Below, one piece after another: positions 13,588 to 63,840 of a DNA stretch of 64,000 bases. The notes under the pieces were generated by a model that did no database searches, was not told the origin of the DNA, and was given only the letters and a program-made list of their open reading frames with translations. Source of the DNA: Macrostomum hystrix. Its lineage: Eukaryota > Animalia > Platyhelminthes. Location: assembly GCA_950097015.1 (NCBI GenBank), contig CATNEN010000014.1:496001-560000 (forward strand), given 5' to 3'. The position numbers were made by a program, and so were the translations under genes. Position 1 is the first letter of the stretch. Every line of letters begins with the position of its first letter.

Positions 13588-16500
13588 CTATAGGTGTGTC
13601 GTGTCGCCACCATCACCATCTTCACCAGAGGCCCCCTTTGAAGCTTCATTATCGGCCCCGTCGAAGGCCTCGTTGACGTACTCCGAAGTGGTGGGCTGAG
13701 CCGATTCCAAAGCAAATGCTCCGGAAGTTTCTGCGGCCGTGCCGCCAGCAACAGCAGCGCCGCCGGCTTCGGCAGCACCACCAGCCGCAGCAGCAGCAAA
13801 TGCCGCGGTTCCCCCAACGGCTGCAATGCTGGAAGCCACAACAGAGCCAGAGATCGTCAGGACTTTGACGATCACGAAGACTGCGAGCCCAATAAAAGCG
13901 ATGCCAAGGACGGGGATGACAGACACCAGAGAGTAGAAGGCGGCACCAGGAGAGTCCTGTGGACCGATGGGTGGCCTAGAACTAGAGGTTGGAACGACAC
14001 TAGTAGTTATCGATGCTGTTGATTTTCTTGTTGTTGTCGTCGATGCGGTTGTTGTGGCTGTCGATGCGGTAGTCGGAGCAGTCGGATCCCTAGTGGTGGT
14101 CGGAGCAGTCGGGTCTCTAGTGGTAGTCTGAGCAGTCGGGTCTCTAGTGGTAGTCTGAGCAGTCGGGTCTCTAGTGGTGGTCGGAGCAGTCGGGTCTCTA
14201 GTGGTGGTCTGAGCAGTCGGGTCTCTAGTGGTAGTCTGAGCAGTCGGGTCTCTAGTGGTGGTCGGAGCAGTCGGGTCTCTAGTGGTAGTCTGAGCAGTCG
14301 GGTCTCTAGTGGTAGTCTGAGCAGTCGGGTCTCTAGTGGTAGTCTGAGCAGTCGGGTCTCTAGTGGTAGTCTGAGCAGTCGGGTCTCTAGTGGTGGTCGG
14401 AGCAGTCGGGTCTCTAGTGGTGGTCGGAGCAGTCGGATCTCTAGTGGTGGTCGGAGCAGTCGGATCTCTAGTGGTGGTCGGAGCAGTCGGATCTCTAGTG
14501 GTGGTCGGAGCAGTCGGATCTCTAGTGGTGGTCGGAGCAGTCGGATCTCTAGTGGTGGTCGGAGCAGTCGGATCTCTAGTGGTGGTCGGAGCAGTCGGAT
14601 CTCTAGTGGTGGTCGGAGCAGTCGGATCTCTAGTGGTGGTCGGAGCAGTCGGATCTCTAGTGGTGGTCGGAGCCGTTTGATCTCTAGACGTCGTTATGCC
14701 TGTAGTCTGGGCTGTTGTCGTTGTTGGATATACAAGATCGTCAACGAATGGAAGTACATTCTCCCACCAGCCGCAGTCCTGCCTGCGGAAGCCGAAGTTC
14801 AATTCCGGGAATTTATCGATTCCGAGAGCGCGGAAATACTTGGTGCGCTTCAGTCCCAGCTCGTAGGGTCTCCAATTCGGAGCACTCGGGTTCAAGTTCG
14901 GATTTCCATCCTTGGCGAATTTCACAAAGCGCCTCATAATTGACTCAGAGAGGTTGGCTCTATCCACAGTCTCTGCTGGACCAGGGCTTGTCGGATTGCC
15001 GAAGAAGAAGAACGCATCTTCAACTGCAAATTAGAAAATGAGGCGGCTAAGAAGGTTGCTTGATATTTATTTTGTTTTTGTCTACTTGCATGCTTAAATT
15101 TTTGTGATTTCAGAGTTTCGATTACGAATAGTTCTGGTAGAAAGAATCCAGTCGTGACATAAACTTACACAGTGTCGAACCCAGCAACGGCAAGCGCTCT
15201 CCTTGGAACAGGGCCATTTCGTCGAATAAATAGTAGTAGGTGGAGTTGTTTGGGCTGGCAGCAACGAACTTCTCCGCGAACTCGGTGATGTCGCAGGTGA
15301 AGTAGCGGTCGCTCAGTGCTTCCGCCCACTCTTGGATCTTCAGATCAAAGCTCTCTAGGTTTGACCACGGAGACTTGAACAGTTTCAGAATCTCCTGACC
15401 ACTGGTGGTCATCTGGGTCGGGAACCTTGGGAAGAAGGTGTTCGACTCGACCAGGGCCTGAAATTATTCAAGTGATGCAGTTTTGTTCTTGAGTGCGAAA
15501 GAATCGGGGCAATCAAATTATGCACTTCACACCGATGTGAATAACAGCGACTCGCACCTGTCGGTATGTCTCAAGCGTGAAGTTGTCCTTGTTCAGAATA
15601 ATGTCACCGACGATTCTCTCGAGAAGGAAATTTCCAGGACTGCTTGTCTGTCCAATGATCATCGGCATCTTGGCGAATCTTCCAGAGTTAACCAGAACCC
15701 ACGGATCGTCAGCGAAGAATTCGCCGTCAATAACAGGCTGGAACTCAATGCCCCTGAAGATCCGGTTAAAGTCCTCTTGCATCTCGTTGATCAACTCGGG
15801 TGTTAGACCTTGCAGACAGTTGAGTACATCTGAGCTGCAGCTCAATGACCTGACGAACTCGGCTTGGTACTGCTTCACAATGCTAGGCTGATCACTGAGC
15901 GGATAGCTCTGCATCGGACTGCCCGTCATCATGATGACTCTCTGGAACGGCTTGCTCGCAATTGGCTCTCGGAGGAGGTGGTATCCAACGGAGATTGAGC
16001 CAGCCTCCACACCGGCCAGCGTGATGGTGTTCTTGTCGCCACCGAACGCCTCAATGTTCTTTGCCACCCAGCTGACGGCGGCCTCCTGGTCAAACAGGCC
16101 CATGTTTCCCGTGATGCCGCTGGCTACAGAGGTTTCCAGAGCGAGGAAGCCAAAGGCTCCGAGGCGGTAGTTGATCGTGACAATCACTGCATGCTCATGA
16201 TCTAGGATGTTCCGACCGTTCCAGCGAGGCTCTGACGATGTGCCGACTTCGAAGAAGCCACCATGGATGAACACAATAACCGGATACGTGCCATTCGGAT
16301 TTCCTGCACTTCTTGGCGTCCAGATGTTCAGGAAAAGACAATCCTCGCTCATTGTGATGGGAGTGTAGTACTTTCTCTGGTAGCAAGAGGCACCCATTTC
16401 CTTTGCTTGATGTGTCACTCCTATGGGGGCAGTTAAAAAAATGAAGGGGTAATTAGAACGACCCAGACATTTTTCCGAATTTCAACAAACTCACCATCTC

Positions 16501-19500
16501 CGGCGTTCCTCAATGGCTCCGGACGCTTGAAACGTAAGTTTCCGACTGGTGGCTCAGCGTATCGCACGCCCAAGAACTCGGACATTGTGTTGTTGCCCTG
16601 AGTCACCACAGTCTGGCCAACGACAGTTCCGAATCCGCTCACGGAAACACTGTAATCAGCAATCACATTGCCCTGGATTTTCTGTGTGATTTTAGCTGTC
16701 TGAGGAGCGTTTCCGATGGACATATCAGGCAGCGCCTTTGTGGAGTCTCGTCGGGTTTTCTGGCCGAATGGCGTTCCGTTCTTCACGAGACCATCGACGT
16801 AAGGCAGGTCGTAGTACCAGACACCACATCGTTGAATAGTTTTGGCTCCCTCGGTGGCATTGTAGCGATCGTCGTAGAGGTTGTTGTAGTCGGCGTAGTC
16901 CCACACTCCCAGCTTTGTCTTTTGCCATGTGGGATCTGCAAATATTTTGGTTTTCGCTTCGATTTTAACACCGCAGCATTGGAAGTACACCGGTTTGCGC
17001 GACCTTGGTGAGCACTGACTGGAGTTAGTGAAGGACAGGCTTTGGTGGGGTGCTTTGGTCGGTGGTTGTTGGGGTGGGGGTCGCTTGTGTGGGGTGGGTT
17101 TGGCGTGGCGGGTGGTATTTAGTTTGTCGTTGTGACCCTTTTGCGTCTCGTTTGCGCGCTAGGTTTTTTTGCAAAAAAACTGCATCTGCTATTTTATTTC
17201 AATTGCCATTTTCGTATTTATTCGTTAAAATTTCTGAAAATATACACTTTGATGGGGCTTATTCTTTGCGTGCCCCTCTGCTTCATCGTCCCACGTTGTC
17301 CTGCCTTTGCCTTCAACTCAAGTTGCGGCACGTCTACCTAATTCCGGGTATTTTAGTCTTGACCAATGACAAATAGTTTCCCTTGAGCTGATGAGTGAGC
17401 ACCCAACCACTTGGTCAAAAAACACGAAGCTAAAATCACCTGATGGACAAGCTCACAAGTTATAGCTCAAGCTCATAAAAATCGGAAGCTATTTACGCTC
17501 GTACCTCAGAATTTCAACACATGCAGCATGCTGCACCTTTTCTTTATGCTTTTAGAGCGGAATGTAGAGTTTTACATGCATTTTATTAATATTTCGTCTA
17601 CAGAATCTATATTTCATTCCATTCACTCCAATCCATAATGAGACACTTGTGCTACCAAAATACTCACTCGGCTGGCCATCTCTGACGAACTTCACAATGT
17701 CCCGCATCATGCGAATCGAAAGCTTTGTGTGAGATTCCGGGTAGACGATGCCAGTACCAGCAGGAATGCCGAAAAAGTATCGGAGATCCGCTTGATGGTC
17801 TGAGCCCAGTTGTTTCCGATCGACGTCCCATGGATCTCGAGCCGTGAAAACGTACAGATAGGTCTCCGTGCTCGTTCGGTTCCGACCCTTCTGGACGATC
17901 GACTCCCACACAGGACAAAGAAAGTAGCGATCACCCACAGCCTGACCCCAGGTGTTTTGCAGAGTCTGCTTGTCAGGACTGCCGATGTAGTCATCGAAGT
18001 ACAGGTGGATGAAGTCGGTGCCGGTCTCGCTCAGTTTGCGAGGGAATCGTGGATGGTACGGGAACGTCTGGTTCAGGAACTGAAAACGGGTTTTATCAGT
18101 GTGTTTGTGATGAATATTGCTTCTAACTAATGAAATTTTCACGTTGCGAAAAATTTGAATGCATCTCAGAAACAATCTAGAGCCGTGTATCTCTCACCTT
18201 TTTGTAAGTCGAAGCATCAACGTCAGCAATGGTCAAGTTCTGATTCGCGAGAGCCTGAGCCACATAGCTTCCTCCAGTGTCTGTTGTGAATCCCATGAGC
18301 ATTTCGGTGGTGGCTGATCCAGCCTCCTGATTTCTCCATGCTTCAAGGGGGTCTCGGTTGTTGAAAAATTTTTCGTCTAGGACCGGTCGAAACTCCAACG
18401 TGAGAAGCAGCTTCAGGAATGGCGTCTGGGCGTTCACGATTGTTTGGGCATCAAGTCGCCTGATGCAAGCAATTGTTTCGGTGATGCCGGCGTTTCCACA
18501 TCCAAGTGCGAGAGCGACGAATGCGAGATTCAAGTCGCGCGTGTTCTCCTTGCCTCCATTGCTATCGTACCAAGCCATGGGCATCGTGGGGGAACCTCCC
18601 ATCATGATGGCTCGCTTGAAGAGTTGTTTCGAATCGGTGATGCTATGGAATCCGACGGCAGCCGCTCCGATACCATGTCCGGCAAGCGCGATGTTCTGAG
18701 GGTCTCCTCCGAAGTGGCTAATTTGGTCACGCACCAAACCGATCGCAAGGCGCTGGTCCAGCAGGCCCATGTTGCCGGGAAGCTCTGCGTCGTTGAGGTA
18801 CAGGAAGCCGAATGCTCCAAGTCGATAGGCCACAGTGACCAAGACGACATCCTCGTACGACAGGAGGTTTTCTCCGAATAGCTCGCGCTGACTGATGGAG
18901 CCAGATTCGAAATTCCCTCCGTGAATGTACACAATCACGGGATAGTTGCGTCCCGCCACCGCCTCCGGTGTCCAAATGTTCATATACAGACAGTCCTCAG
19001 AGATTGGAATTCCCAGCGTGCTGTTGTCTTGTGGGCAAGCTGGCGGAAGTGTCTGAGCTACTAGAGTTCCAGGAGCTCCGGAATATCCTCTCGATGGTGC
19101 GAACCTAAGATTTCCGACTGGTGAATCAGCGTAGGGCACTCCGAGGAATCTAGCTATGATTTTATTGTTTCTGTCGAGTCGAACACGGTGGCCGACGACG
19201 GTAAAGTCAGGGTTGACTACCACCGTCGCATTTCCGACGACAGTACCATCCGGTCCGATGGGGGGCCGAGTTGTTGGTTGAACTGTTGGCGGCAACGTCG
19301 TTGGATCCCTTGTCAAATTGTCCACGAAAGGGAGGATTTCATCCCAAAAGCCGCACTCCTGTCGTCGGTACCCGTCGCGGTACATCCTCGGTGGCAAGTT
19401 GTCCGCATCGAGAAGCAGATGCGACTTGTTCCTGGCATCGTACTTCTCCCACCTAATCGTTCCGCTGGGCTCGCCATCGCGCGCAAAGTTCACGATCACA

Positions 19501-22500
19501 TGCATGATTTCGTCAGACAGCTGGCGCTGCTCGTCCGGACGAGCTGGGCCCGGGCTCGACGGATTGCCGAAGACGTAGAACGCGTCTTCAACTGAAATGA
19601 GTTTTCGAAAGTCTTGCTAATTGGCGTGAGAACCAGTCTTTAAAGCCATTGTTATGGTGCTGCAACCAAGGCTAGTTGCATATATCTGCTAGAATATTCA
19701 CCTCTACTCGTGAAGAGCTCGGATTACAATAAATTCCATCAAAAACCAAAAAAGTTTTTTAGTTCACCTACATAGACTGGCGTGCTTGAGTGGTAGCGCC
19801 GATTCCTCGTAGTCTTTGCCCTCGGTGAACAGGTAGTTGAAAACTGGCTGGTTTGAAGCCTTGGAGTAGGCGTCGAGGAACTTGTTGTTTGCACAGGTAA
19901 AGTAGCGGTCGCTGACAGCGAGACCAAGGTCTCTCAGATCTCGCTCAAAGTTGCCCTGTCCGTTGTACTGCATGTAGTGGTTGCGCAGGCCAGTTCTGCC
20001 TGCGGTCGTCAACTCTGTCGGAAACCTCGGGAAGAACTCCGTCATGCGTTCCAGGGTCTGAAAATGATTTCAAGCGTTAAGAAGATACAGCAAACAATTT
20101 TAAATCCCGAAAGATTGCCCAGAGCAAAGTTAAACCTAAGCCAAAGTTCATTTGCTTAGTGCAGCTCTCGTATTGAAAGTTGTTATTACAAACTGGTGAA
20201 CAACAGTCTTAAAGTACGTCAAAAAATTATTAGCTAGGAACGATGAAGAAACAGCGCATTTTAAAAGGACTTTAGCTGCATTCGAAAAGTCTGGCTAGCT
20301 CCCCGGCGAAAATTCAGCAGACATACTCGGAAAAACCGGTCGTGAAAATTGGCATGCATTCGTCACTCACCCGAAGATAAACGCTGTGAGTGAAATTTCT
20401 TGGGGTCAGCAGCACACCCTCCGTGGCTCGCTCAAGAAGGAAATTGCCTGGTCTGTCGACGCCTCCGAAAATCATTGGAACCTGCATCAAATTTTTAGGA
20501 TCGACAGTCCACGGATCCTGAGAGATGAAGTCTCCGTCAATCATCGGTGGGAACTCAAGTCTCTGGAAAACCTGTTGGAAAACTTCCTGAGCCGCGTTGA
20601 TTGTGTCTGCAGGTAAATCCCGAATACACTTTAGAACCTCAGCACCTTGGCAGCGCAACCTAGTTTGAGCAAAGCTGATTTGAATGTCTCGAGCTTTCTC
20701 CACGTCATCCGTCAGCGGATAGGACATGTACGGAGATCCGGTCATGAGCACCACCTGGTGGAAGCGGTTCTGACTTGGTCGGGCCATGTGGTAGCCGATC
20801 GATACAGCACCTGCCTCAACGCCCATCAAAGTGATGCGCTGCTTGTTGCCTCCGAATCTGTCGATGTGGTCGGCCACCCACTGGAGAGCCATCTCCTGAT
20901 CCCAAAGACCGTAGTTTCCAACGATCTCTTTGCTGTCGAGCGAGAGGAAGCCGAACACTCCGAGTCGGTAGTTGATTGTCACAACGACGGCGTCCTCGTG
21001 ATCCAGGATCATGCTGCCGTGCCAGCGATCTTCGTTGATGCCGCCGACTTCGAAGAAGCCTCCAGGAATGAAGACAAGCACAGGAAGGTTCGAGACGTCC
21101 CTGTCGGCTCTCTTTGGCGTCCAGATGTTCAAGTAGAGGCAGTCTTCAGACATGCTCAGATTGTGGTATATCCTCTGGATACACATTGGGGGCATTTTCG
21201 TCGCATTGTGTATGGTGTCTGAAAAATAAATATAAATTTAAGAAATAATGGCAGCACTTAAGAGCGGCAAAATGTTTTAACAAAGACTCTTTAAGTATTC
21301 ATTCGATCATGCTGAGAAAATTGCTCGTACGCACCGGACGTTGTCTCTGGCTTCTCTGGCTTCGCCAATCGAAGATCTCCGACAGGCGGCTTTGCAAATG
21401 GGACTCCGAGAAATTGTGACATTGTGACGTTTGAAATCGTCCTAATAGTGTGTCCATGGACATGACCAAAGTTTGGAATCGCAACCGAGTAGTCTGCGAC
21501 TACTTCATGTACGTTGAAAGTCGAGGATTGCTGATGTAGTGGGCCAGCCGTCAGTTGCTGCTTTCCATTGACGCTAGCAAGAAGCTTGAGGAATTCTTCG
21601 TCGTCGTTGGCTGTTGAAGCGGTCAGATTGTTCACAAACGGCAGTTCATTCTTCCAGAGGGGGCAGCGGCCGGTGTTCAGCCCGAATCCATCTTCGACCA
21701 TGACTGACAGCACGGAGCCTGGACCACCTGAATCTTCCTGCACGACATCGTAGATGAGGAAGTCAGATGTTTGGAAGCTGGTCTGGTTCCATCGCGCAGG
21801 TGCTGCAATGAGTTTATACATGGCATTCAGTTGCTATAGATGTTTTTTAAACATGGAGATTCCAGCAAGCGAATTTACGGTTGCTTACCAGTGCCGTCCA
21901 TGTACTGCACAAAGTCGTCCATCATCAGCCGGGACAGATCCTTGTGAGACTCCGGATATCCGTCTCGCCTCAACGGCTCGCCAAACAGGTAGCGAATGTC
22001 TCCCCAGTGGTCGGCTCCAACCAAGCCTTCCTGCACTCGGAATGGGTCCTCCACATCAACGTAATACATGTGGATTGGGTGTTTCTTGGCTCTCAACAGG
22101 TCGCTTGCGGCCTCCCAGATTGGACACAGGAAGTTGAAGTCGCCCATCGCTCTCGACCAGATGGCCTTGATGCGCTCATTGTAGTCGAAGTAGTTCCACT
22201 CGGTGAGGGCCAGCTTGAGGAACTGCAGCGCTGAGGCTCGATTTCTGTCAGGAAATCTGGGGAAGTAGTTGAACTGCAGCTCCACGATCTGATAAGGAGA
22301 AGAATTGGGCATTAATCATTAATTTTTTACCTTATTTACTATCGATTCCAATGCGGGCTTCAGTTAAAGTTTGGAGTATTTTTGTAGGAGTCATCTTCAT
22401 CTTCATGTGGCTCCAAAAACTGTGTTGAAAATGATGCGACATTTGTCATGGAACAGTTTTTTTTAAAGTTTTAGGAAATCTGGTTTTGAGGTAAATGTAC

Positions 22501-24392
22501 TTTTGCAGCCCGTCTGTTTGTTAGATTCGCGTTTGAGGTGGTGTTCGTCTGAAATTCACGGGCAGATCGACCCAGTTTTTTACCCCCCCCTTGCAACCAC
22601 CCCTATCGATTTATTGCATGCGTAATATTTAAACATTTAACTTCCGACCCCACACACCTCAAGCTGAAGGCTAAATATAATACCATTGCCTTGGAGTTCT
22701 CTCAATGTGAATTTTTTCGACTATAGCAAATAGTTCACCAAATCGAGCGTTTTTCGACCTAGCCTAATAAACAAAATCTATGAAATTTTTGCTTCATGAT
22801 GACTACTTCAAAACTGTTTTTCTGATTCGAAGATAAGTCAACTTGTATATATTAGTCAATGACCGTAAAAATGCAAAAAAGTGATCTCAATGTGTTCTTT
22901 TCATGATGGCCATTACAATTTTTTTATTTGAAGAGATCTCCCGATTTCCCTTTTTTTCTTTGCTGAATTTAAGATGCATGAGTATTGTGTCTGAAATTTA
23001 AGATGCATGAGTATTGTGTCTGAAATTTAAGATGCAAGAGTATTGTGTCCGAAATTTAAGATGCATGAGTATTGTGTCTGAAATTTAAGATGCAAGAGTA
23101 TTGTGTCCGAAATTTAAGATGCATGAGTACAAGTGTCAGCTTTTGTCTGAAATTTAAGAAAGCATCGAGCTCACCCTCTCAAAGATGGTCCTGTTGAGCG
23201 ACTCCCACGAGATGTTGCGTCTCGCCAGCGACTGCTCGATGTAGTACCGTCCTGAGTCTGAGCCCACTCCAGTCATATACGGCTTGTCCATTTCTCCCTT
23301 CCACCATTCGTCATAAGGGTGAATATTGTTAAAGAAGGATTTGTTGAACACAGGCAAGAACAGCAGATGATCTCTCGAGTGCTGCATGTTAAGCTGCTCA
23401 GTCATGATTCTGTCGAGAGGAAGACTCCTCAGACATGTCAGGACGTCGTCCAGCGGACCTCGACCGCAATCAAGCTGAACGTTCACAAAGTATTCGCTCT
23501 CCTTCAGGACCTCCGCCGTCGAGCTTGACCAAGCGAGCGGCATTGAGGGCGAGCCACCCATCAGGATCATTCGGTCGAAGTAGGCTTTCGAGTCTGTGAC
23601 GGCGTGGAATCCGGCGGACGCAGCGTCTGTCCCGTGACCAATCAAAGTGATTCGGTTCCGGTCGCCACCGAATGCCGGGATCACTCTCCTGATAAAGTCC
23701 AATGCGAGTCGCTGATCCATCAGACCGAAGTTTCCAGGCAGCTTGTCGTCGTCCAGGAACAGAAAGCCGAGAGCTCCGAGTCGGTAATTGACTGTCACCA
23801 GAATCACGTCCTCGTTCTCGAGCAGCTGCTCACCTCGATATTCAGCCAGGCTGTTCGCTCCAGCTGTGTAGTTTCCACCGTGAAGGAACACTGCTGTCGG
23901 GTGTCTTCTGGATGTGTCTCTTGGAGCCCAGATGTTGAGGTACAGGCAGTCTTCGGACATGCTACCACCCGGCACTGGCGGGATCGTCTGAGGACATGCT
24001 GGGGGCATGGTCTTCGCTGTGTAGTTTCCTCCTTTTGGTAGTCCAGCGTTTGCGAACCGGGTTAGAGGCATTTCCGCGTACGGCACACCCAAGAACCGGT
24101 TAATTATCTTAGAGTTGTTTAACTGCACGACATGGCCAGCCAGAAGCATTCTCGAGGTGTTGTCGAGATCAAAATCGGTGAAAACTTCGTCAACTACAAT
24201 TCCTTCAGGTCCACCTGGTGGCGCAGTTGTCCTTTCTGTTGGCTCTGTTACATCTGAAACTCGATTTTGTCCATGAGTCTCAACGTTAGCCATCGATTGT
24301 TTGCCTTTGACCGAGACAGTCAGTGTCCCTACAACAATGGCAAATGTTGCCAACAGCCTAAGCGCTGCCTGTAGTCGTCGTGGCGTTGTCAT
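13588..24392 (-). CDS. Gene B: four-domain tandem non-catalytic carboxylesterase/cholinesterase-like (neuroligin-like) type I membrane protein, ~2684 aa; exons 24392-23175, 22288-21889, 21802-21335, 21218-20371, 20057-19772, 19591-18198, 18079-17668, 16935-16495, 16420-15558, 15457-15169, 15023-13588
   Basis: Signal peptide MTTPRRLQAALRLLATFAIVVGTLTVSVKG. Four copies of FLGVP(Y/F)A(x)P / SEDCL(Y/F)LNIW / GG(N/F)(F/Y) / NYRLGxxGFL / GNxGLxDQ / FGG(D/N)xxxI. Mucin stalk and TM FYSLVSVIPVLGIAFIGLAVFVIV. All introns are GT-AG with matching phases and the summed exon length (8055) is in frame. Confidence 0.85.
14070..14690 (-). repeat. Coding 27-bp minisatellite (PTAPTTTRD/PTAQTTTRD x ~23), mucin-like stalk of gene B
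   Basis: Seen directly in ORF 13588-14967. Absent from the paralogous exon of gene A. Confidence 0.95.
14750..16700 (-). other. Gene B domain 4 (type B pseudo-esterase; equals gene A domain 8)
   Basis: Elbow TLAGVEAGSISVGYH. GSTL-F-EDAFF at the catalytic His position. Confidence 0.85.
16840..19250 (-). other. Gene B domain 3 (type A pseudo-esterase; equals gene A domain 7)
   Basis: Elbow ALAGHGIGAAAVGFH. GSDHQADLRYFFG retains His. Confidence 0.85.
19320..21520 (-). other. Gene B domain 2 (type B pseudo-esterase; equals gene A domain 6)
   Basis: Elbow TLMGVEAGAVSIGYH. PGGFF oxyanion loop. Confidence 0.85.
21640..24190 (-). other. Gene B domain 1 (type A pseudo-esterase; related to gene A domains 3/5)
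   Basis: Elbow TLIGHGTDAASAGFH. GADHWGDIRYLFG retains His. Confidence 0.85.
22965..23160 (+). repeat. 29-bp minisatellite, ~6 copies, intron 1 of gene B
   Basis: Unit tgaaatttaagatgcatgagtattgtgtc. Confidence 0.9.
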
Positions 24393-24398
24393 GGCAAC
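24385..24398. promoter_or_regulatory. RFX X-box motif GTTGTCATGGCAAC overlapping the gene B start codon; second X-box-like site at 24496-24509
   Basis: Exact match to the X-box consensus GTHNYY-AT-RRNAAC. The second site is GTTGCCATGGCGTC. Confidence 0.45.
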
Positions 24399-25476: not shown

Positions 25477-25745
25477 GGTGACAAAAACTGTGTAAACTTC
25501 TGTAAAAACATCTATGGCCAATCTACGAGCTCGTATATTTGTGCAATAATATTATACTATCAGTGGTGACAAAAACTGTGTAAACTTCTGTAAAAACATC
25601 TATGGCCAATCTACGAGCTCGTATATTTGTGCAATAATATTATACTATCAGTGGTGACAAAAACTGTGTAAACTTCTGTAAAAACATCTATGGCCAATCT
25701 ATGAGCTCGTATATTTGTGCAATAATACGAGTATTATACTATCAA
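25477..25745 (+). repeat. 88-bp tandem repeat, ~3 copies
   Basis: tgacaaaaactgtgtaaacttctgtaaaaacatctatggcc... recurs at 25479, 25567 and 25655. Confidence 0.95.
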
Positions 25746-54800: not shown

Positions 54801-57800
54801 GCGCCTGGCACCTTGAGTTCTTCCGGAAGCCTTGGGTTGTAGAAGGAAGCGTTCACGATATTCTGAAATATTACGATGTGACTGTCTCAACTCGGCAAAG
54901 AAAAAAATATAGTGAAACACTGACAATGTTATTTGTAGTATCTAATTATTTTACCTCAAGGACTTCGTCGTAGGAGATATTCAGTAGGTCCATCTCGCCG
55001 AGTCTGACCCTGCGCTTAATAATTTCATTGCCAGGTCTATCGACGAAGCCGATAATCATAGGCACCTGGTTCATGTGACCTTTTTGCACTGATATCCAAG
55101 GGTCCTCCTTGAGAAAGTCTTCATCGATTGTTACCAGAGCCTCCGGACCGAACCTGTTAGCGAACTGGTTTGTGTAGACTTCGCGAATCTCCTCTTTGGT
55201 CTTGTTTCGCATGCAGGCGAGCCGCGCACTATTTAATCCTGAATCACAGCCCATCAGCCGTAGAAACTGCTGGACGCGCATTTGCGAGCTTTGGCTATCA
55301 TTAGTCAGAGGATAAGCCATTGAGGGACTGCCAGTCTGAAGAATGGCTCTGGCAATTCGTGTTTCATTTCGAATCAAGTGGTAGCCGATGGAAACAGCGC
55401 CTGCGTCATCTCCAACGGCGGTAATAAGGCTGGCATTTCCACCAAAGTTGTGAATATGCTCCTCAACCCACTTTATCGCCATCTCTTGATCAAAGAGTCC
55501 GAAATTTCCTCGGTTTCCATCGCTTGAAAATGGTAGGAAGCCCAGAGCCCCCAGACGATAGCCGACAGTTACCACGACAACGTCCTGCAGCTCGACTATC
55601 TTTTGGCCGCTTCTTGCTGGTTCCTGAATTCCTCCTACTTCAAAAAAGCCACCGTGAATATAGACAAGAACTGGGACTTGTGTACCGTTCGTTAGACGAG
55701 GCCTTGGGGTCCAAATGTTCAGGTACAGGCAGTCCTCGCTCTCTTCTAAGTTTCCGCCATATGCTTGAGGACAAACTTTTGGCATTTCTAGTGCCAAGAT
55801 TTCCTCTGAAAAAAATAAATTATATGATACACATTTTTAGGGCTGTACATATATTAAAGTCCAAGCTCAAATCGTAATCGATGAATATTTCCTTACTGTT
55901 ATTGATAGGATACATCGATGGTTTTTCGAATCGCTTGTCATTGATTGGGGGCTCGGCATAGGGAACCCCCAGGAAGCGCTCCATCTGAACACCGCTTTCG
56001 TTGACCTTCAGAAGGTTTCCGACGATTTTTGCATTGACGTCAGGTAGATCTATCGTCACATTGCTAACGATTTCCTCAGTGGTGGGTATCCTGAGGCTCT
56101 TGGCAGCTTTCTTCTCTTCCTTGGCTCGGTGGCTGTCATCGGGAATAGTACCATCCAACAAGAACGGATCCCTAGGCAGCGGGATCTTTACTCTTGTTGA
56201 GTCTCCAGGTACCAATCGATTCACGTAACTGAGTGTGTCGAACCACCAGCGGCAGCGACGAATCGCGAAGCCGCCAGTTAAGTTGTAGAGGCCTGGATCG
56301 TCGACCGGGCGGTAGTCGTTGAAGTTCCAATCTCCGGCGATTACGCTTGGCCAGTGTTGGTCTGTTGGTCGCAATAAGATAGCTTTGTTATTGCCCTTTT
56401 CTGCCGGAATTCTTACTTAAAAGTATAAGCTAGCCGATTTGTCTACAGGACAGGAAAAATGCGGATTAAATAGAAAAAAGTTTTCAACATTTATTTTTCT
56501 AGAAGGGCGATGCTCAGAAATTGATTTCTTACGCGAAATCAATTCTCGTATTTGAATAGGGTATGTAATTTATTCTTTCAGAGTAAGACAACGAAGCTGT
56601 TTAGCCGCCCGTTTTTACCAATAGGGAATTTCCCCTCTGTTATATTTTGGTAGCGCCTAAATCCTAATAGCGTTGGCAGGTGACTGATTGGTTGGCAGAC
56701 TAGGCAATGGTGTACTGTGGTTGAGCTGCGCCTAATATTTTGGCTTGATCAGGAAATTTGGAGAAATTCGCGTCGGGGTGTCCATAGTGGCCTATTTCCA
56801 CTAGTTTTAGTAGCACTTGAAGGTCCAGCGAATCCGTCTAGATGAAGGTAGGTGACCACCAAAGACGAAGATGATGCAGGTACATTCGGTTAACATGCTG
56901 ATACATTTCGAAGGCCTTGCAAGGTCACGCTGAGGCGCAGTGTTAATTTGTGTATCTTGGTGCATGAAACGCACTAGCGCTTATGGGAAAAATCCTACTT
57001 CCGGGCCAGAAGCATTGAATATCCCGATGGTCTGAAGAGCTGGCGACTTGATTCTTTTTTCAGAAGATGGTAAAGAAAAAGTTGGCCCGTGTTTTTGAGT
57101 TTCGTTTTTTGCGTTGCTCCGTTCGGATGAAGCTCAAAAAATTGTCACGGGGGGTAAATTCCCCCCATGGTAAATCAGAAGACGAATCATTTGTCATAGA
57201 CGATTTGAAATAGAGCAAAAGGTTGCCAAACTGTATCCATCAATTCCAAATGCAGTTTTTTAACTAACCTACACATAGCCTAGTTTGTCATAAGTACATC
57301 AAGCACATTAAGCACATTAACCTCTTCCGTACCGAGACTTTTTACTGCACTCCGTGAAAATCTGTATGGTCAGCATGGCTGACCATAGACTTTTTCATCC
57401 TTGGCGTGTGGTCTTGCTTCACTCCATGAAAATCCGAAGCGAACTCTATGCAGTTCTTGCGCATCGGTTTTTTATTCCTTAGACGAATGGGTGGGTGGCT
57501 GTAACGCAATGCGTCTATGTCCTAAACCTTCCAACCCTATATATGTACAGTAAGCTGTTGGCGCAGTACAGCTTGATGCCGTACTTGGCACGCTTCGTTG
57601 CGATGTACTGCTTGAAGCGCAGTCGCCCCTTGTACAGCACCACTGGCTCCTCCTCCGGCCTGTAGACATTCATGCACAGATGTCTCAAGGTATGCAGCAA
57701 AGGTCGAATCTTAAACAACGAATCGCCAAGAGCCAGATCCTCGGTGCAATCGCAAAAGCGAAAGCAGACCGAGCAGCTGCTTGAACAGATCCCTGCAGAG

Positions 57801-60800
57801 CGCTTCAGGGATTTGAAAGAATGGTGTTGAATAGTAGCTGTCCATACATCAGTACTGGTTCATCTCGGCTTTTTGTTGCTGCCCATTTAGAGGTACATCC
57901 CAATTAACTTCATCACTTTATTCGCACCACAATCAGTCCGTTTTCGAAAAATCACAGCTAGGTCATCAGCAGGCGTTGCATGGATTACGGCCCAAGGCTC
58001 TTCGGTTAGTCCATTCAAACATTAGTCTTCAAACAAAGAGTCGGGGAGATAGAGACAAAGAAAAAAAGAAGTGAACTGCTCAACATCACCGGGAACTTCG
58101 ATTCCAGGATTAAGTCCTGGTGTGCCTAGAAATTCAGTTTCACTTTCGGAAACGTCAATCCCAGCGATAGCAGGACGCCATGGCATCTCAACGCCCGCTT
58201 CTTCATTGCCTGTGTCCATGACATCAGACGCCTCCTCCAAGATGACTAAGTCCTCATCATCTGACGTCATTAGCTCATCCATTCGCTTATTTTCTTTGTG
58301 ACGTTACTGAAAATGTCGCTGCTGTCTAATAAATGGTGGCTGAAGTTAGCTTGTTTACACTAAGCTTGTTTACACTACTCTTAGGTCAAGACCCTAGGAT
58401 GTTACAGTGACATACATGACTTCTTTATGTACTCGTACATTCGTTAGTTTGAAGCATACACAGCTGAAATCCGAGATTTTTCAGTTATCACTTATGGCCT
58501 CACAGTTATCAAGCCCGCTTTGCAGAAGCTATTTAACTCAATCCTTAGGCTTGGATGTACTCCTAAACAATGGTCACTAGCATTAATAAGCCCAATCTAC
58601 AAGAAGGGGTCTCGCAGTGATCCAAAAACTACAGACGAATAAGCGTCCTGCCAGCCATCGCGAGACTGTTTGCATCAATTATTTACGAGAAATTAGAAGC
58701 ACACATCAAAGCCCTGAACTCACTATCGGCTAGTCAAATAGGAAGCAGAAAAAGTTGCCGGACTTCTGATCACATCGCAACCCTATTGACATTAATTCAT
58801 AAAAATAAGAAGTATAGACCTTTCTATCTCGTTTTCTTTGATTTAAAAAGCGCCTTTGACATGGTTCACCAGCCAACCCTAGTCACACGATTAAAGCAGT
58901 TGGGCGTGAACCCAGCAATAATAAGTATTATTGAGATTATGTACTCAAGCGCGAAATTTTACCTCATGGTTTCAGAAAGCAACCATGAAGCGTGTCAAAT
59001 TACTAATGGTGTCAGACAAGGATGCCCCTATCTCCACTGCTATTCTCCCGATGCATCGACCCGCTAAGCACAATTCTAAAAAACTCATTTCAAAGCCATA
59101 CCTCCATATTGAATGAAGAAGTAAACAACCTGCTTTATTGTGACGATTTAGTCATTTTTGGTGAAGACCTGACAGAATTACAAAAAAGCCTCTACAAAAT
59201 AGCAGACTTTTGCAATACTCATAAATTAGAAATAAACATTCAGAAGACAAAGCTTCTGAGCTGCAATCTCCACTCAAGGGCAACACATAGACTGTTTTTA
59301 CCAAGGACCACTAGTAGACTACTTGAGTAGTCCGTGGTTTTTACATGGTCAACTTGTTGAACCCGTACGACAGTGGAAATATCTTTGGTTTCACATGAAC
59401 GTGAAGGGAACAGTAGATACTCATGCCATAGTACCAGGTAAAAAAGTGGACATCCAATAATGCTTCTGAGAAAGTTGGCAGGATTTCAGAGAGCAACACT
59501 AACAGCTCATCTTGTTTAGCACAACTTTGATTGAAAGCATAGTTCTCTATGCATCAGAGGCCTGGGGAGCTTTTGTCTCCTGGAAACTGGGTACTTGGGA
59601 TCGGAACCTTATAGAGAGAATTAATTTTAGAATCTGCAAGTCGATTCTGCAAGTTAGTCCAAACACTGACAGCAATGGTGCTCGGTCCGGTTAGGAAGAC
59701 TACCACTATTATAAAGTATCCAAAAAGAAGCCGTCAATACTGGTCCTCAGTTCGGAGCCGACCAGACTCCATCATCGCGAAATGTGTGGCAGATTACAGA
59801 ATACATCGATGTTGGCATTGGGGAAAAATTAATAGTGAAGTAATGCGGAATTGTCAACTGACTAGAAAAACAAAGTCCATCAAAACGCACAGAGAGAATT
59901 TTGAGTCAGAGTTTCGAAGGCACTGGACTCAGAGGATGGGAAAATCAGCCAAGCTCAGCCACTTCTATTACACGTTTAAGAAAGATTTCTCCCGAGAAAA
60001 GTACCTAACAATAATCTCTAACCCAGAAAAAAGGCGCACAATGTCCCGATTTCGTCTAGGAAACCACAAACTGGCCTGTGAGACATTGCGCACTGTAAGA
60101 CCGAAAATCGCCTATGAAAACAGAACATGCCCAAAATGTAGAGTCGAGGTAGAGAACGAAAATCATATTCTCTTTAGATGCGGTTGGTCCGTTTATGTTC
60201 CAATTAGAAATAAATCCATAGAGAAAGTGGCAGGCACAGTTCGAAATTTCGAAAGCCTAACAGCTGATGACAAAATGGTGTATTTAATGACACAAGGAAA
60301 GCACAGAACTAACAGAAAGTTTTGTGAACTTCATAGAAAGCAAACTTAAAGCTAGATAAAAAAGCCACTGCCCTGAGGCCCATAGTTAGAATGCTTGATT
60401 ATAATTTGAGTTTTAGTTTTCTTATATTTGATCGTAACTTGCAAAAACAAAATAGCTATTCTCCTTTCGGGATTGAAGTGATTTCAGTCACAGTTTTAAT
60501 TTTATCTTTAAATTTCTATATTTCATTTTTTTGTTGTAATGCCTTTGTTTACAAATTTCAAATATTTTATTTACCTAAAATTAAAATTACTATTATGAAT
60601 GCTACTGTTTTTCTTTCACCTTTTTAAATCGAATTGTTCAGCCTTGTTACCAACATCAAATAAACAAAAAATCTGTACCCAATCGGCATGCGCACTTTAA
60701 TAATAATAATAATTATTATTATTATTACAATATCTCTCAAGCGTTTTTTGTTCATTCCGAAATTGTAGTCAAATGCACTGTCTATGCTTCCTGCAAAAAC

Positions 60801-63800
60801 AGGAGTTGTCTGTGTTAAGTGCTGCTTACGCTTAAGTGCTGATATGTTGCACAAACTAGACCAGTTCGGAAGAGGTAGTCTAAACTAAGGTCTGCTATTA
60901 TCAGAGCTCTTGCTTTTTGGGGTCTCAGTCAGTTAGTACAATAGCAGGTGCAATATAACGATCGTAATTAGAGGTCAGGATTAGGGGTCAGGAAAAGAGG
61001 ACCTGCATCCCGAGACTTCAAATTTGCAAGACCACAGCACTAACTAGTCAAACACTTTAAGTTAGTAGGGAAAGATTTTGCAAAGCGATAACAAAGTTGC
61101 TAACTGCTATCTACGTTGGATCAGATTATCTCAGAGGCAGATGCGGTGCGAGTGGGGCGGAGGAATGTGAAGAGAGACCTATTAAGGGGAGTTAACGTCT
61201 GTTAAGCACCTAAGAGTTGCAACTGCAGCTGCGCTATGTGGCCTCACCGCAGAATCGAGCTCGTGGACATTGGGGTGAGAAGCAAATGCGTTAGACCCCT
61301 ATGGCACTCACCCCAGCAACCCATACAAAAAATGTTGCCCATCGCAGATTTTCAGCTTTACTGATTCTGTCGATGGCTCTAGCAACTCGTGAATGCTTGT
61401 AAGCGTTGGGTGATCAACTCTACATATTTCATTAAAGCACTTATGCTCTTCAGAACTACCATTACTTTCAGAATTACCTTTACAGTAGCGCTTATCTGTT
61501 TGCAAAAACTTTATGTTACACTTCGCATTGTGAAATAAATTTCAATAAGCCAAATTGAAATCAACCAGTTTTGTAACTTCTATACCCTTGAATTTAATTT
61601 AATAATCTGCATGACAGATCCTGCCTATGCAACTGTGAATATGCTACTGAGCCACGAGTTATCCAGTAGATATTATACCCAGATCTTAAGCCTAGACCAG
61701 AGGAATTCATAATAATGCGCCCAGTGAGGGGTTTCGGTGCAATAATCAACAGATTCCAGCTTACTGGGCACTCCGTTGGTGACGAAGTTCGCCAGGTCCG
61801 CCATCATGCGTTTCGACAGATTGTTGTGCGCATCCGGGAATGCGGGTCCCGGTCCGTCTGGCACGCCCAGGAAGTAGCGGACGTCGTTCACGTGACCAGG
61901 CGCCGCGTCCTCTCTGAACGGATCCGGGGCGCCGAAATAGTACAAGAAGCTTTTCATGTCCTCGCCAGGCTTCGGCCTGTCGTCGTCAAATAGTGCGTAC
62001 AGTGTCGGGCAAAGGTAGCTGAAGTCGCCCAGCGCTTCGGCCCACTTCTTCAGCAGCAGCTGCTTGTTCTCAGCATCGTTCCATTCCGTGTGCGACAGCT
62101 GGAGAAACTTCATACCCGTGTCGTCTACCCGCGTCGGGAAGCGAGGATGGAATGGGAACTGCAGACGCAGGATCTGGATTAGAAAGTGGGTTTGCAGAAT
62201 GAGATTCGCTATAAATATGAAAGTTTGAATGTACGAGCTAGTATTTAAAAAGTTTAAATGGAAGTTAATATTGTAGAAGTTTTGCAAAAACAGCTTGAGA
62301 GAATTCAAAGCCTCTATACGAGTGTTTTGTGCATTCGCTAATTAATGAGGGAAATTTAAGAAAACTTGTTCAAATTACTATTTTTTTACTTTTTCCTCAC
62401 CGATTTTCATTAAAAGTTTCTTAATTACTTAAAAAACTTGTCTGATAAGAACTCGGATCGAATGCTCCAAGCGTATAAAAGGTTCAGTAACTGGTCTTAC
62501 TAATGATAATTATCTTATATACTGCAAAAAAACGCAGTAAAATGGTGCAATTGAACGCGCAAGATAAACGCTATAGTTTCCACATGTTCTTACATTCAGG
62601 TTAAGTTTTTTGCCTACAACCAAAGAATATTACGAGCTTAAAACCTTCAACTAGGACCGAAACCTTAGTTCTGTTTGACATTTCTTCAATGCCAAAAGTA
62701 TAGCAGCTTTATTTACGAAGCGCCACTCACTTCGTAGTACACGGTGCGGTTCATGATATCGATGGTCAGGTTCCTCGAGTTGAGCGAGTTCAGAGCAAAC
62801 TCGATGCCCGAATCGGCCGTGACACCCATCAGGATGGTGACGTTCTTGCGACGCTCGCCCCAGCTGATGAGAGGGTCCAGATAGTTGAAGAACTCTCGGT
62901 CCAGCACCGGCATAAACTCAAGGGTGGTGTAAAGCTTTTCATAGTTCTTCTGCTCCTCGATGAGCTTCTCAATCGAAACATCTTTCCTGACGCAGTCGAT
63001 CACCTCGGCCAGCTTACCGTCGCCTTTTGCACAGTCGAGCTGGATGTTCACAAACCGCTCGCTGATTTCTCTCACTGCGTTGATGTCGTTGGACCAGGCC
63101 AGGGGCATGAAGTGCGAGCCGCCCATCATCACTGCACGGGTCAGGGGAATGGAGCCAGCAGCAATGTGGAACCCGACGGACGCTGAGCCTGTGCCGTGAC
63201 CAGCCAGAGTGATTTTGTCCCGGTCTCCACCGAATGATCCAATCAGCTCTGTAATAGTCCTTAACGCCAGGCGTTGGTCCAGCAGACCGAAGTTTCCAGG
63301 CATCTCATTCGGGTCGAGATAAAGGAATCCAGTGACTCCGAGTCGGTAGTTGATGGTCACGAACACAATGTCCTGGTTTCGCAGTAGCGTCTCGCCCTGG
63401 TTCTCGGGCTCAGCAATGCCGCCAGTCTCAAAGCGGCCGCCATGTATGTAGACGAGAACAGGATACTTTGCACCGCCTGTGGTGTTAGGGGACCAGATGT
63501 TCATGTACAAGCAGTCTTCGCTGTAGGGTAGGCTCTTCGTGGAGTTGTCCTGGGGACACAGCGGTGGCTGATGCGTGGCGTCAATTGTGACGTCCTCAGC
63601 ATAACTCAGCGGGCTGGGCCTAGCGAAACGGCGATCGCCAGTTGGTGGCTGAGCGTAAGGGACTTTGAGAAATCTGTTGATCTCTTTCCACTCGGTTTGG
63701 GAAGTGACATTCACACGATGGCCATTGAACTTGTAGCCATCATGGGTCACCTGAACAGGTCCGATGACTGAGTCGGCATTGAAGCCGGCAGTCAGAGCCA

Positions 63801-63840
63801 GTAGCAGGACTGCTACTAGCGTGATTTTTAGCGGCCTCAT
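39875..63840 (-). CDS. Gene A: giant eight-domain tandem non-catalytic carboxylesterase/cholinesterase-like (neuroligin-like) type I membrane protein, ~4681 aa; exons 63840-62731, 62173-61765, 56400-55897, 55805-54955, 54862-54580, 54488-53149, 53063-52661, 52417-51953, 51841-50994, 50774-50486, 49995-48644, 47922-47523, 47436-46969, 46853-46006, 45698-45413, 45232-43839, 43720-43309, 42576-42136, 42062-41200, 41099-40811, 40665-39875
   Basis: Signal peptide MRPLKITLVAVLLLALTAGFNA. Eight COesterase motif sets, and no internal signal peptide or stop. Each ORF ends or starts at a GT/AG site, phases match at all 20 introns, and the total (14046 nt) is divisible by 3. Ser/Thr stalk, TM and tail ..DTTHL*. 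Confidence 0.8.
40390..42330 (-). other. Gene A domain 8 (type B)
   Basis: GVEAG elbow, HGGFF, GQTSSPG (acid lost), STLFEDAF (His lost). Confidence 0.85.
42480..44890 (-). other. Gene A domain 7 (type A)
   Basis: GHGIG elbow, HGGNF, GSDHQADLRY. Confidence 0.85.
44960..47150 (-). other. Gene A domain 6 (type B)
   Basis: GVEAG elbow, PGGFF, HASLFEDAFY. Confidence 0.85.
47270..49670 (-). other. Gene A domain 5 (type A)
   Basis: GHGTD elbow, HGGNY, GADHWGDIRY. Confidence 0.85.
49740..52140 (-). other. Gene A domain 4 (type B)
   Basis: GVEAG elbow, PGGFF, HASLFEDAFY. Confidence 0.85.
52260..54170 (-). other. Gene A domain 3 (type A)
   Basis: GHGTD elbow, HGGNY, GADHWGDIRY. Confidence 0.85.
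54230..56070 (-). other. Gene A domain 2 (type B)
   Basis: GDDAG elbow, HGGFF, GAGLSEDTFY. Confidence 0.85.
56600..57180. mobile_element. MITE-like element with imperfect TIRs containing a single monomer of the 60-bp satellite
   Basis: Left end tttttaccaatagggaatttcccctc and right end ggggtaaattccccccatggtaaat are imperfect inverted repeats. Internal gactgattggttggcagactaggcaatggtgtactgtgg..gcgcctaatattttgg. Confidence 0.6.
57317..58400 (-). mobile_element. Degenerate piggyBac (PGBD-like) DNA transposon
   Basis: Minus-strand EEPVVLYKGRLRFKQYIATKRAKYGIKLYC (piggyBac DESMxxFKGR..KYGIK motif) and N-terminal FLGTPGL..FTSFF. TTAA|CCTCTTCCG end at 57317. Frameshifts and stops. Confidence 0.85.
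58545..60400 (+). mobile_element. 5'-truncated, frameshifted non-LTR retrotransposon (LINE, CR1/L2-like) reverse transcriptase
   Basis: ISPIYKKGSRSDPK..YRRISVL, FFDLKSAFDMV, GVRQGCP/LSPLLF, LLYCDDLV, LEINIQKTK, and C-terminal RTCPKC..ENENHILFRC across several frames. Confidence 0.92.

What the first reader, a model, noticed from the sequence alone, without database searches (positions are those of the whole stretch)
13588..63840. Strict A/B alternation of two differently inactivated domain types, suggesting built-in pseudo-heterodimers
Seen: odd (A) domains have elbow GHGTG/GHGTD/GHGIG (Ser->Gly, as in neuroligins) and keep the triad His (GHVND, DHWGD, DHQAD). Even (B) domains have GDDAG/GVEAG (Ser->Asp/Glu) and Leu at the His position (GL-S-EDTF, SL-F-EDAF, TL-F-EDAF). 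The triad acid is lost in both (DSG/DTG versus RPG/SPG), and the first disulfide loop is short (CPQ..SEDC, ~11-13 aa). Order is ABABABAB in gene A and ABAB in gene B. Established: neuroligins and AChE dimerise through C-terminal four-helix bundles. Inference: each A-B pair forms an intramolecular dimer that is the functional unit, with an acidic residue in B's vestigial pocket possibly used for ion or ligand binding.
Basis: partly seen in the sequence, partly recalled or inferred. Interest (0 to 1): 0.8.

Follow-up and report, generated by a model that had tools for sequence, protein, structure and literature searches.

The report
Alternating dead-esterase domains, flatworm membrane proteins
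Two neighbouring flatworm genes encode giant cell-surface proteins made of 8 and 4 cholinesterase-like domains that have lost catalysis in two different ways and strictly alternate, because a two-domain A-B module was copied again and again; whether each A-B pair folds into a built-in dimer could not be tested here.

Summary
Two minus-strand, intron-split genes encode type I membrane proteins. Gene A (63840-39878) has 21 exons, 4668 aa and domain order ABABABAB. Gene B (24392-13591) has 11 exons, 2684 aa and order ABAB. Both end in a mucin stalk, a TM helix and a tail ending TTHL. Spliced transcript contigs confirm eight tested junctions, including two that split a B-domain 'His' codon.

A domains have GHG(T/I)(G/D), keep His and lack the acid. 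B domains have G(D/V)(D/E)AG, Leu for His and Pro for the acid. A and B are separate clades (100/100). Further A-B genes lie on contigs C12 and C29. The M. lignano orthologue (74-84% identical) keeps the same order and motifs. dN/dS is about 0.18 for both types.

The alternation is best explained by duplication of an A-B-stalk module, not by independent selection for order. The catalytic Ser was probably lost once, as Ser->Asp in single-domain GLDAG relatives, before A and B split. B's acidic residue is therefore inherited.

No paper describing such proteins was found. This scan also noted a 'double-headed' two-domain relative elsewhere in this genome (s1-300470). Verdict: a real, expressed, lineage-specific new variant of non-catalytic cholinesterase-like membrane proteins.

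The parts
39875..63840 (-). Gene A. 21 exons, 4668 aa: signal peptide, A1 B1 A2 B2 A3 B3 A4 B4, short Thr-rich stalk, TM helix, cytoplasmic tail. Exons: 63840-62731, 62173-61765, 56361-55897, 55805-54955, 54862-54580, 54488-53149, 53063-52661, 52417-51953, 51841-50994, 50774-50486, 49995-48644, 47922-47523, 47436-46969, 46853-46006, 45698-45413, 45232-43839, 43720-43309, 42576-42136, 42062-41200, 41099-40811, 40665-39878.
   Evidence: GT-AG model with no stop. Eight junctions confirmed by spliced contigs. Colinear with M. lignano protein P0121 at 74-78% identity.
13588..24392 (-). Gene B. 11 exons, 2684 aa: signal peptide, A1 B1 A2 B2, long mucin, TM helix, tail. Exons: 24392-23175, 22288-21889, 21802-21335, 21218-20371, 20057-19772, 19591-18198, 18079-17668, 16935-16495, 16420-15558, 15457-15169, 15023-13591.
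   Evidence: Junctions mapped from gene A by flanking sequence; the frame stays open. Region 14689-22305 is 98.7% identical to 40331-47939, introns included. Gene B's own junctions were not checked with reads.
56219..63768 (-). Gene A domain A1 (aa 25-554). Elbow GHGTG at 63187-63201. His site GHVND at 61883-61897. The span contains a 5.4 kb intron that holds a retroelement fragment.
54214..56071 (-). Gene A domain B1 (aa 604-1131). Elbow GDDAG at 55399-55413. The Leu-for-His site GL|S|EDTF spans the intron 54580|54488.
52245..54162 (-). Gene A domain A2 (aa 1149-1678). Elbow GHGTD at 53599-53613. DHWGD at 52770-52784.
49724..52127 (-). Gene A domain B2 (aa 1718-2245). Elbow GVEAG at 51432-51446. 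SL|F|EDAF spans the intron 50486|49995.
47264..49657 (-). Gene A domain A3 (aa 2268-2796). Elbow GHGTD at 49094-49108. DHWGD at 47632-47646.
44961..47143 (-). Gene A domain B3 (aa 2837-3363). Elbow GVEAG at 46444-46458. SL|F|EDAF at 45219-45419.
42434..44885 (-). Gene A domain A4 (aa 3389-3922). Elbow GHGIG at 44307-44321. DHQAD at 43427-43441.
40382..42313 (-). Gene A domain B4 (aa 3963-4500). Elbow GVEAG at 41641-41655. TL|F|EDAF at 40652-40817.
21630..24191 (-). Gene B domain A1 (GHGTD at 23625-23639). 94% identical to gene A A3; its first exon is closer to A2.
19320..21509 (-). Gene B domain B1 (GVEAG at 20809-20823). 98% identical to gene A B3.
16793..19244 (-). Gene B domain A2 (GHGIG at 18666-18680). 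99% identical to gene A A4.
14740..16672 (-). Gene B domain B2 (GVEAG at 15999-16013). 99% identical to gene A B4.
54172..54186 (-). PPIGP motif in the B1->A2 linker. The same motif lies in B2->A3 (49676-49690) and B3->A4 (44892-44906). It also lies just before the TM helix of gene A (40223-40237) and gene B (13960-13974), and in gene B's B1->A2 linker (19251-19265).
   Evidence: The same juxtamembrane motif occurs in the C12 gene and in single-domain relatives P0001 and P0156.
14068..14687 (-). Gene B mucin array: a 27-nt unit repeated 23 times (TTTRDPTAP/Q). It is absent from gene A.
40130..40207 (-). TM helix of gene A (gene B: 13867-13944). It is followed by an Ala/Gly-rich then acidic tail ending TTHL (39878-39889; gene B 13591-13602).
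   Evidence: The hydrophobic stretch and the [S/T]-x-hydrophobic C-terminus are read from the sequence.

Best explanation
These are two paralogous genes of a Macrostomum-type flatworm. They encode heavily glycosylated type I membrane proteins whose ectodomains are strings of non-catalytic cholinesterase-like (COesterase) domains.

The building block is a two-domain module. An A domain (nucleophile Gly, His kept) is followed by a roughly 40-50 aa linker, then a B domain (nucleophile Asp/Glu, His->Leu), then a short Pro/Thr stalk ending in PPIGP.

One-module genes carry this block directly on a mucin stalk, a TM helix and a PDZ-type tail. The genes in the window arose by serial duplication of the whole module. 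That produced four modules in gene A, and a very recent copy of its last two modules became gene B. This is why A and B alternate strictly.

Both types are kept by purifying selection and are transcribed and spliced as multi-domain mRNAs.

Shown:
- the architecture
- the loss of the catalytic triad
- two clades for A and B
- module duplication
- conservation in M. lignano
- transcription

Inferred:
- The domains act as rigid binding or adhesion surfaces, like neuroligins and other cholinesterase-like adhesion molecules.
- The tail (TTHL) docks PDZ scaffolds.
- The module number sets reach or valency.
For: - Architecture and splicing.
- Triad states.
- Disulfide pattern: six Cys per domain and a short first loop.
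- A and B each form a clade at 100/100. Both sit inside a clade that otherwise holds only Macrostomum single-domain GLDAG proteins.
- The A and B trees agree on (unit 2,(C12,C29)).
- One-module A-B genes on C12 and C29 share intron positions and phases, including the phase-1 intron in the B 'His' codon.
- PPIGP lies in every B->A linker and before every TM helix.
- Segmental duplication at 98.7% identity, introns included.
- dN/dS is 0.19 for A2/A3 and 0.17 for B2/B3.
- M. lignano orthologue P0121 has the same order and motifs, at 75-84% identity per domain.
- Tails end TTHL, SPV or TPV.
Against: - No functional, localisation or binding data exist for any member.
- The adhesion/receptor role rests on analogy with neuroligins and related proteins, which are not orthologues.
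- The PDZ reading rests on three C-terminal residues.
- Gene B's own 5' exon and junctions were not checked against reads. A 98.7%-identical copy could in principle be an assembly duplicate, although its mucin array and first exon differ.
- Transcript evidence comes from assembled contigs, some from runs whose RNA status is only guessed.
Confidence: 0.72

Rival explanations
1. Each A-B pair folds back on itself into an intramolecular pseudo-heterodimer through the canonical four-helix bundle (helices alpha3(7,8) and alpha10). Gene A would then display four dimer-like beads. B's acidic pocket residue would bind an ion or ligand. This is compatible with the module-duplication history and would add a structural reason for it.
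For: - The canonical ChE/neuroligin/thyroglobulin dimer uses alpha3(7,8) and alpha10 (PMC5943944).
- Both types keep an AChE-like alpha10 (C-x-F/W-W...L-P-F/Y-V).
- A and B always occur together, in A-then-B order, in five genes of this genome and in M. lignano.
- A->B linkers are long (about 40-50 aa) and not stalk-like, whereas B->A linkers look like stalk.
Against:
- Co-occurrence and order are fully explained by descent from one A-B ancestor.
- No position is invariant within A and within B yet different between them.
- The alpha3(7,8) region of B is not clearly hydrophobic.
- B's acid is an inherited state shared with single-domain relatives, not a feature tied to pairing.
Confidence: 0.3
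2. Polyprotein or shedding model. The conserved PPIGP motif at every module boundary and next to the membrane is a processing site. Gene A would then be cut into soluble A-B didomains plus one anchored didomain.
For: The motif R/P-P-P-I-G-P-(D/E/Q) sits exactly at each B->A boundary and 5-10 residues before the TM helix, in multi-domain, didomain and single-domain relatives.
Against: - No known protease site matches.
- The motif may simply be the relic of the ancestral stalk that was copied with the module.
- There are no protein-level data.
Confidence: 0.1
3. Residual or altered catalysis. The Asp/Glu at the nucleophile elbow of B (or the Asp-His-Glu set of the single-domain GLDAG relatives) acts as a carboxylate nucleophile, as in some other alpha/beta hydrolases. 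The proteins would then be enzymes, not pseudoenzymes.
For: - The elbow carboxylate is retained in all B domains and all GLDAG relatives across two species.
- The oxyanion-hole GG is retained.
Against: - B lacks both His and the acid.
- A lacks the nucleophile and the acid.
- The Cys loop that forms much of the gorge is cut to 13-15 residues.
- To my knowledge (general knowledge, not tested here) no COesterase-family enzyme with an Asp nucleophile is known.
Confidence: 0.05
4. Artefact. The multi-domain proteins are tandem single-domain genes wrongly joined, or the repeats are assembly errors.
For: Many multi-COesterase database entries from other phyla look like fused tandem genes, for example four nearly identical GESAG domains in Lineus P0123.
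Against: - Domain boundaries lie inside single exons. The B tail, the linker and the A head share one open frame, and so do the A tail, the linker and the B head.
- There is no signal peptide, stop or TM helix between domains.
- Spliced contigs bridge A1-B1-A2 and B2-A3.
- The M. lignano protein is colinear over 2253 aa.
Confidence: 0.03

Closest known systems
Neuroligins (cholinesterase-like adhesion molecules, CLAMs)
   Same: Type I membrane protein. Cholinesterase-like ectodomain without the catalytic Ser (Gly in A domains). Ser/Thr-rich stalk, single TM helix, and a C-terminus of the [S/T]-x-hydrophobic kind (TTHL here).
   Different: - Neuroligins have one domain and form homodimers between chains; here there are 2, 4 or 8 domains of two types in one chain.
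- His is also lost in B, and the acid is lost in both types.
- The Cys loop is much shorter.
- They are not orthologues. The genome's own neuroligin-like locus groups with a barnacle 'neuroligin-2-like' protein, outside the A/B clade.
- Neurexin binding is untested.
Macrostomum single-domain GLDAG membrane proteins (P0001, P0156; this genome C41, C38)
   Same: These are the nearest relatives by tree. They share the stalk, the PPIGP juxtamembrane motif, the TM helix and the short Cys loop. Their nucleophile is already Asp.
   Different: They have a single domain and keep His and Glu. A and B are further-degenerated descendants that are fixed as a pair.
Cholinesterase-like domain of thyroglobulin; Drosophila gliotactin, neurotactin, glutactin
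   Same: A non-catalytic COesterase fold used for dimerisation, chaperoning or adhesion (PMC5943944).
   Different: They have a single copy per chain and belong to different lineages. None shows heterotypic tandem arrays.
Predicted multi-COesterase proteins of other phyla (Styela P0122; Lineus P0123 and P0165; echinoderm didomain proteins P0134, P0140, P0150)
   Same: Several COesterase domains in one predicted chain. The echinoderm set also pairs a triad-bearing first domain with a Ser-less second domain, and first and second domains cluster separately.
   Different: - They fall outside the Macrostomum clade and arose independently.
- Most keep full triads and may be fused gene models.
- All the looked-up ones (Styela, Lineus, Acanthaster, Lytechinus) are annotated 'uncharacterized'.

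Membership tests
COesterase / type-B carboxylesterase fold (Pfam PF00135) | Significant match to the family profile over the whole domain | tested here: met
   Exon pieces score 225-301 bits against a cut-off of 27. A local HMM covers positions 2-533 of 533 in all 12 domains.
COesterase / type-B carboxylesterase fold (Pfam PF00135) | Three conserved disulfides (six Cys in the canonical order) | tested here: met
   Exactly six Cys per domain at aligned positions. The first loop is shortened to 13-15 residues. The pairing itself is inferred.
Catalytically competent carboxyl/cholinesterase | Ser nucleophile in G-x-S-x-G | tested here: not met
   Gly in all A domains and Asp or Glu in all B domains.
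Catalytically competent carboxyl/cholinesterase | Triad His and triad Glu/Asp | tested here: not met
   His is present in the window's A domains only. It is Leu in B. The acid position is Ser/Thr in A and Pro in B.
Neuroligin | Groups with neuroligins in a family tree | tested here: not met
   A and B lie in a Macrostomum-only clade (100/99). The genome's own GHGYG multi-exon locus joins 'neuroligin-2-like' P0174 elsewhere (99/96). Only one named neuroligin-like sequence, of low quality, was available.
Neuroligin | Single ChE-like ectodomain, Ser->Gly, stalk, TM helix, PDZ-binding tail | tested here: inconclusive
   Ser->Gly is met in A only. Stalk, TM helix and an [S/T]-x-hydrophobic end are present. 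The single-domain criterion fails.
Neuroligin | Binds neurexin LNS domain | not testable with these tools
Canonical ChE-type four-helix-bundle dimer (here proposed within one chain) | alpha3(7,8) and alpha10 helices with a hydrophobic packing face | tested here: inconclusive
   alpha10 is AChE-like in both types. The alpha3(7,8) region is hydrophobic in A and less so in B. Sequence alone cannot decide.
Canonical ChE-type four-helix-bundle dimer (here proposed within one chain) | A predicted or observed A:B interface | not testable with these tools
The step is referred.

The most novel reading that the evidence does not exclude
Each A-B module is a hard-wired, asymmetric version of the cholinesterase/neuroligin dimer. 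Two pseudoenzyme halves have diverged so that each keeps a different remnant of the active site. They pack through the four-helix bundle within one chain, and the modules are multiplied (1, 2 or 4 per protein) to tune valency or reach at the cell surface. This would be the first covalent heterodimeric form of the ChE dimer, and a natural experiment on why this fold dimerises.
Probability: 0.3. Interest if true: 0.75.

Novelty: new variant of a known kind. Interest (0 to 1): 0.55.

Why it matters
Non-catalytic cholinesterase-like domains are known as single-copy adhesion or dimerisation modules in neuroligins, thyroglobulin and the insect CLAMs. Here the same fold is used as a repeated, heterotypic building block of up to eight copies. 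It is expressed, is under purifying selection, and is conserved between two Macrostomum species.

The family gives a stepwise record of pseudoenzyme decay. Ser->Asp came first, and then two complementary losses followed. It also offers a testable case of whether the ChE dimer interface can be internalised into one chain.

M. lignano is a laboratory model with RNAi and in situ methods, so the function can be addressed directly. The family seems lineage-restricted and has no functional data, so its wider significance is still open.

Tried and rejected
1. Complex prediction on the M. lignano A1 and B1 domains (P0121:100-599 and 680-1179) returned NOT FOLDED, because chain 1 resembles a class the tool does not fold. 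There is no verdict.
I left it uncollected on purpose.
3. The joined (spliced) protein models were not sent to any database search or folding tool. Searches used single exons by reference. The joined models were used only in local scripts for alignment, trees and dN/dS.
4. I asked whether didomain proteins of Lineus (P0165: GHGA then GSDT) and of a maker-annotated EukProt entry, Tk02295 (P0158: GHGA then GQDS), are distant A-B relatives. Rejected: they fall outside the clade, and the two Lineus domains are each other's sisters.
5. I searched for positions that are invariant within A and within B but differ between them. None was found under strict invariance.
6. Literature searches for tandem or multiple cholinesterase-like or carboxylesterase domains, and for Macrostomum together with esterase terms, found no paper on such proteins. 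The library is incomplete, so this is weak evidence of absence.
7. The search for homologous proteins with one exon found only single-domain hits of 38% identity or less, because of its length window. The orthologue appeared only in the exhaustive search.
Full report
**What is there.** The window is a stretch of a 220 Mb eukaryotic genome (G000 contig C14). Paralogues elsewhere in the genome look, by eye, about 85-90% identical to a Macrostomum lignano protein (P0001). The gene A orthologue in M. lignano is 74-84% identical. I therefore infer that the organism is a Macrostomum flatworm other than M. lignano.

On the minus strand, long open frames with COesterase matches assemble through canonical GT-AG junctions into two complete genes:
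- Gene A: ATG 63840, 21 exons, 4668 aa.
- Gene B: ATG 24392, 11 exons, 2684 aa.

Each gene starts with a signal peptide. Eight (gene A) or four (gene B) complete domains of 527-538 aa follow. Each ends with a Thr/Pro-rich stalk, one TM helix, and an Ala/Gly-rich then acidic tail finishing in TTHL.

The domain boundaries lie inside single exons. A B tail, its linker and the next A head share one frame, and so do an A tail, its linker and the next B head. These are therefore true multi-domain proteins, not fused neighbouring genes.

**Transcription.** Contigs of public runs from two studies were laid on 49950-55949. They show joints at eight predicted junctions, with GT..AG ends on the gene's strand. 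Two of them, 54580|54488 and 50486|49995, split the codon next to the Leu that replaces the catalytic His in B1 and B2. One 3.7 kb contig runs from A2 back through B1 and beyond the upstream end of the stretch. The RNA status of some runs is a guess, and contigs cannot give expression levels. Gene B was not checked.

**The observation.**
- Odd domains: elbow GHGTG, GHGTD or GHGIG (Ser->Gly). His is kept. Ser or Thr sits at the acid position.
- Even domains: elbow GDDAG or GVEAG (Ser->Asp/Glu). Leu sits at the His position and Pro at the acid position.

All domains have six Cys. The first loop has 13-15 residues between its Cys, against about 24-28 in reference cholinesterases. The order is strictly ABABABAB and ABAB.

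**Are A and B real classes?** Yes.
- Identity is 39-43% among old A copies and 36-47% among old B copies, but only 28-35% between types.
- In maximum-likelihood trees, A and B are each one clade at 100/100.
- The two types also differ in intron positions.

Both clades sit inside a strongly supported clade (100/99). Apart from A and B, that clade holds only Macrostomum single-domain membrane proteins with the elbow GLDAG, which keep His and Glu.

The simplest history is therefore as follows. Ser->Asp happened once, before A and B split. B kept the carboxylate and lost His and the acid. A changed Asp to Gly and lost the acid. B's acidic residue is inherited, not a new device.

**Why they alternate.**
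- Gene B positions 14689-22305 match gene A 40331-47939 at 98.7% identity, introns included.
- A2/A3 and B2/B3 are recent copies with mosaic stretches of 98-100% identity.
- The genome holds further one-module genes: one on C12 (GHGDA then GVEAG) and an inverted pair on C29 (GHGPS then GVESG). The C12 gene has the same intron positions and phases, a mucin stalk, PPIGP, a TM helix and an SPV end. The C29 genes show the same A-then-B exon layout; their exact junctions and their stalk and tail were not examined.
- Their A domains fall in the A clade and their B domains in the B clade. Both trees agree on (unit 2,(C12,C29)).
- Every B->A linker carries the PPIGP motif that otherwise sits just before the TM helix, also in single-domain relatives.

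The copied unit is thus A-linker-B-stalk. Unequal exchange between such units can only give whole numbers of A-B pairs, so strict alternation is expected without any selection on order. The 12 domains amount to three old modules in this window.

**Is it functional?**
- dN/dS is 0.19 for A2/A3 and 0.17 for B2/B3.
- M. lignano protein A0A1I8G704 (P0121, 3380 aa, an incomplete model) is colinear with gene A and has the same order and motif states.
- Per-domain identity between the species is 75-84% for both types.

Both types are therefore maintained.

**How it most likely works.** The triad is gone and the gorge-forming Cys loop is truncated, so catalysis is unlikely.

The overall build is a ChE-like ectodomain on an O-glycosylated stalk, then a TM helix, then an [S/T]-x-hydrophobic C-terminus. 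This is the build of neuroligins and other cholinesterase-like adhesion molecules. I therefore read these proteins as cell-surface binding or adhesion proteins, in which module number sets valency or reach. This is inference by analogy.

They are not neuroligin orthologues, because the genome's own neuroligin-like locus groups elsewhere.

**The pseudo-heterodimer idea.** It is reasonable. The canonical dimer of this fold uses alpha3(7,8) and alpha10 (PMC5943944). alpha10 is well kept in both types. A->B linkers are long and unlike stalk, while B->A linkers look like stalk.

Everything I could measure is equally explained by common descent, however. I put the idea at about 0.3.

**Novelty.** An exhaustive protein search finds many predicted multi-COesterase proteins in other phyla. 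They lie outside this clade, and most keep full triads. No paper on tandem ChE-like domains was found in the held library.

The scan's own notes list the four-domain paralogue (s1-262301) and a 'double-headed' two-domain receptor elsewhere in this genome (s1-300470). I checked the former directly, and I checked the latter by finding the C12 and C29 genes.

I class this as a new variant of a known kind.

Noticed in passing
window 28158-29949 (-): Between the two genes lie exons with a PHD finger (29602-29949) and a CXXC zinc finger (28158-29003). The pair suggests a CFP1/CXXC1-like gene.
   Followed up: partly
window 58786-60349 (+): Frameshifted reverse-transcriptase fragments (Pfam RVT_1) of a retroelement lie inside the 5.4 kb second intron of gene A, on the opposite strand.
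   Followed up: partly
window 34494-36251 and 37273-37829: Two minisatellite arrays in the intergenic region. By eye, from the translations, the units are about 60 nt (reading PNLSTNQSKYQAQQSHRTPL) and about 21 nt (AASGYEL). They create long spurious ORFs in several frames.
   Followed up: no
window 48611-49978, 53131-54531, 23154-24392: The first exons of A2, A3 and gene B A1 are a mosaic. Gene B's exon is 97.9% identical to A2 but 95.5% to A3, while the rest of gene B follows A3-B4. Central parts of A2/A3 and B2/B3 are 98-100% identical and their ends 50-90%. This looks like gene conversion or unequal exchange.
   Followed up: partly
G000:C12:1836000-1847000 (L007, L008); G000:C29:2603000-2623500 (L024, L025): Three more A-B genes of one module each. 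The C12 gene has a 1.9 kb intron filled with a tandem repeat. The C29 genes form a head-to-head inverted pair, and their A domain has also lost the His.
   Followed up: partly
G000:C41:911000-918000 (L003); C38:33365000-33376600 (L004, L023); C38:12768000-12815000 (L005, L006): Single-domain membrane COesterase-like genes with elbow GLDAG (Asp for Ser) that keep His and Glu. Whether an Asp-His-Glu set has any activity is open.
   Followed up: partly
P0134, P0140 (Acanthaster), P0150 (Lytechinus), P0135, P0141: An unrelated two-domain COesterase family, named for echinoderms where looked up (P0135 and P0141 were not). It pairs a Ser-bearing first domain with a Ser-less second domain (GHGS, GHGA, GMGS...). 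The second domains cluster together (support 93), while the first domains sit together only in a poorly resolved group. This is a second, independent heterotypic didomain architecture, annotated 'uncharacterized'.
   Followed up: partly
G000:C38:27749500-27757500 (L026); G000:C1:12624800-12625150 (L020): Multi-exon loci with elbows GHGYG and GHGFG. The C38 one groups with a barnacle 'neuroligin-2-like' protein and is probably the worm's true neuroligin-type gene.
   Followed up: partly
window 53690-55949 in runs X6 and X7: Transcript contigs show a 'goes back 2260' joint (55949 -> 53690), and clusters of differences around 53870-53915. The likely causes are assembler cross-over between near-identical A-domain exons, or strain differences.
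   Followed up: no
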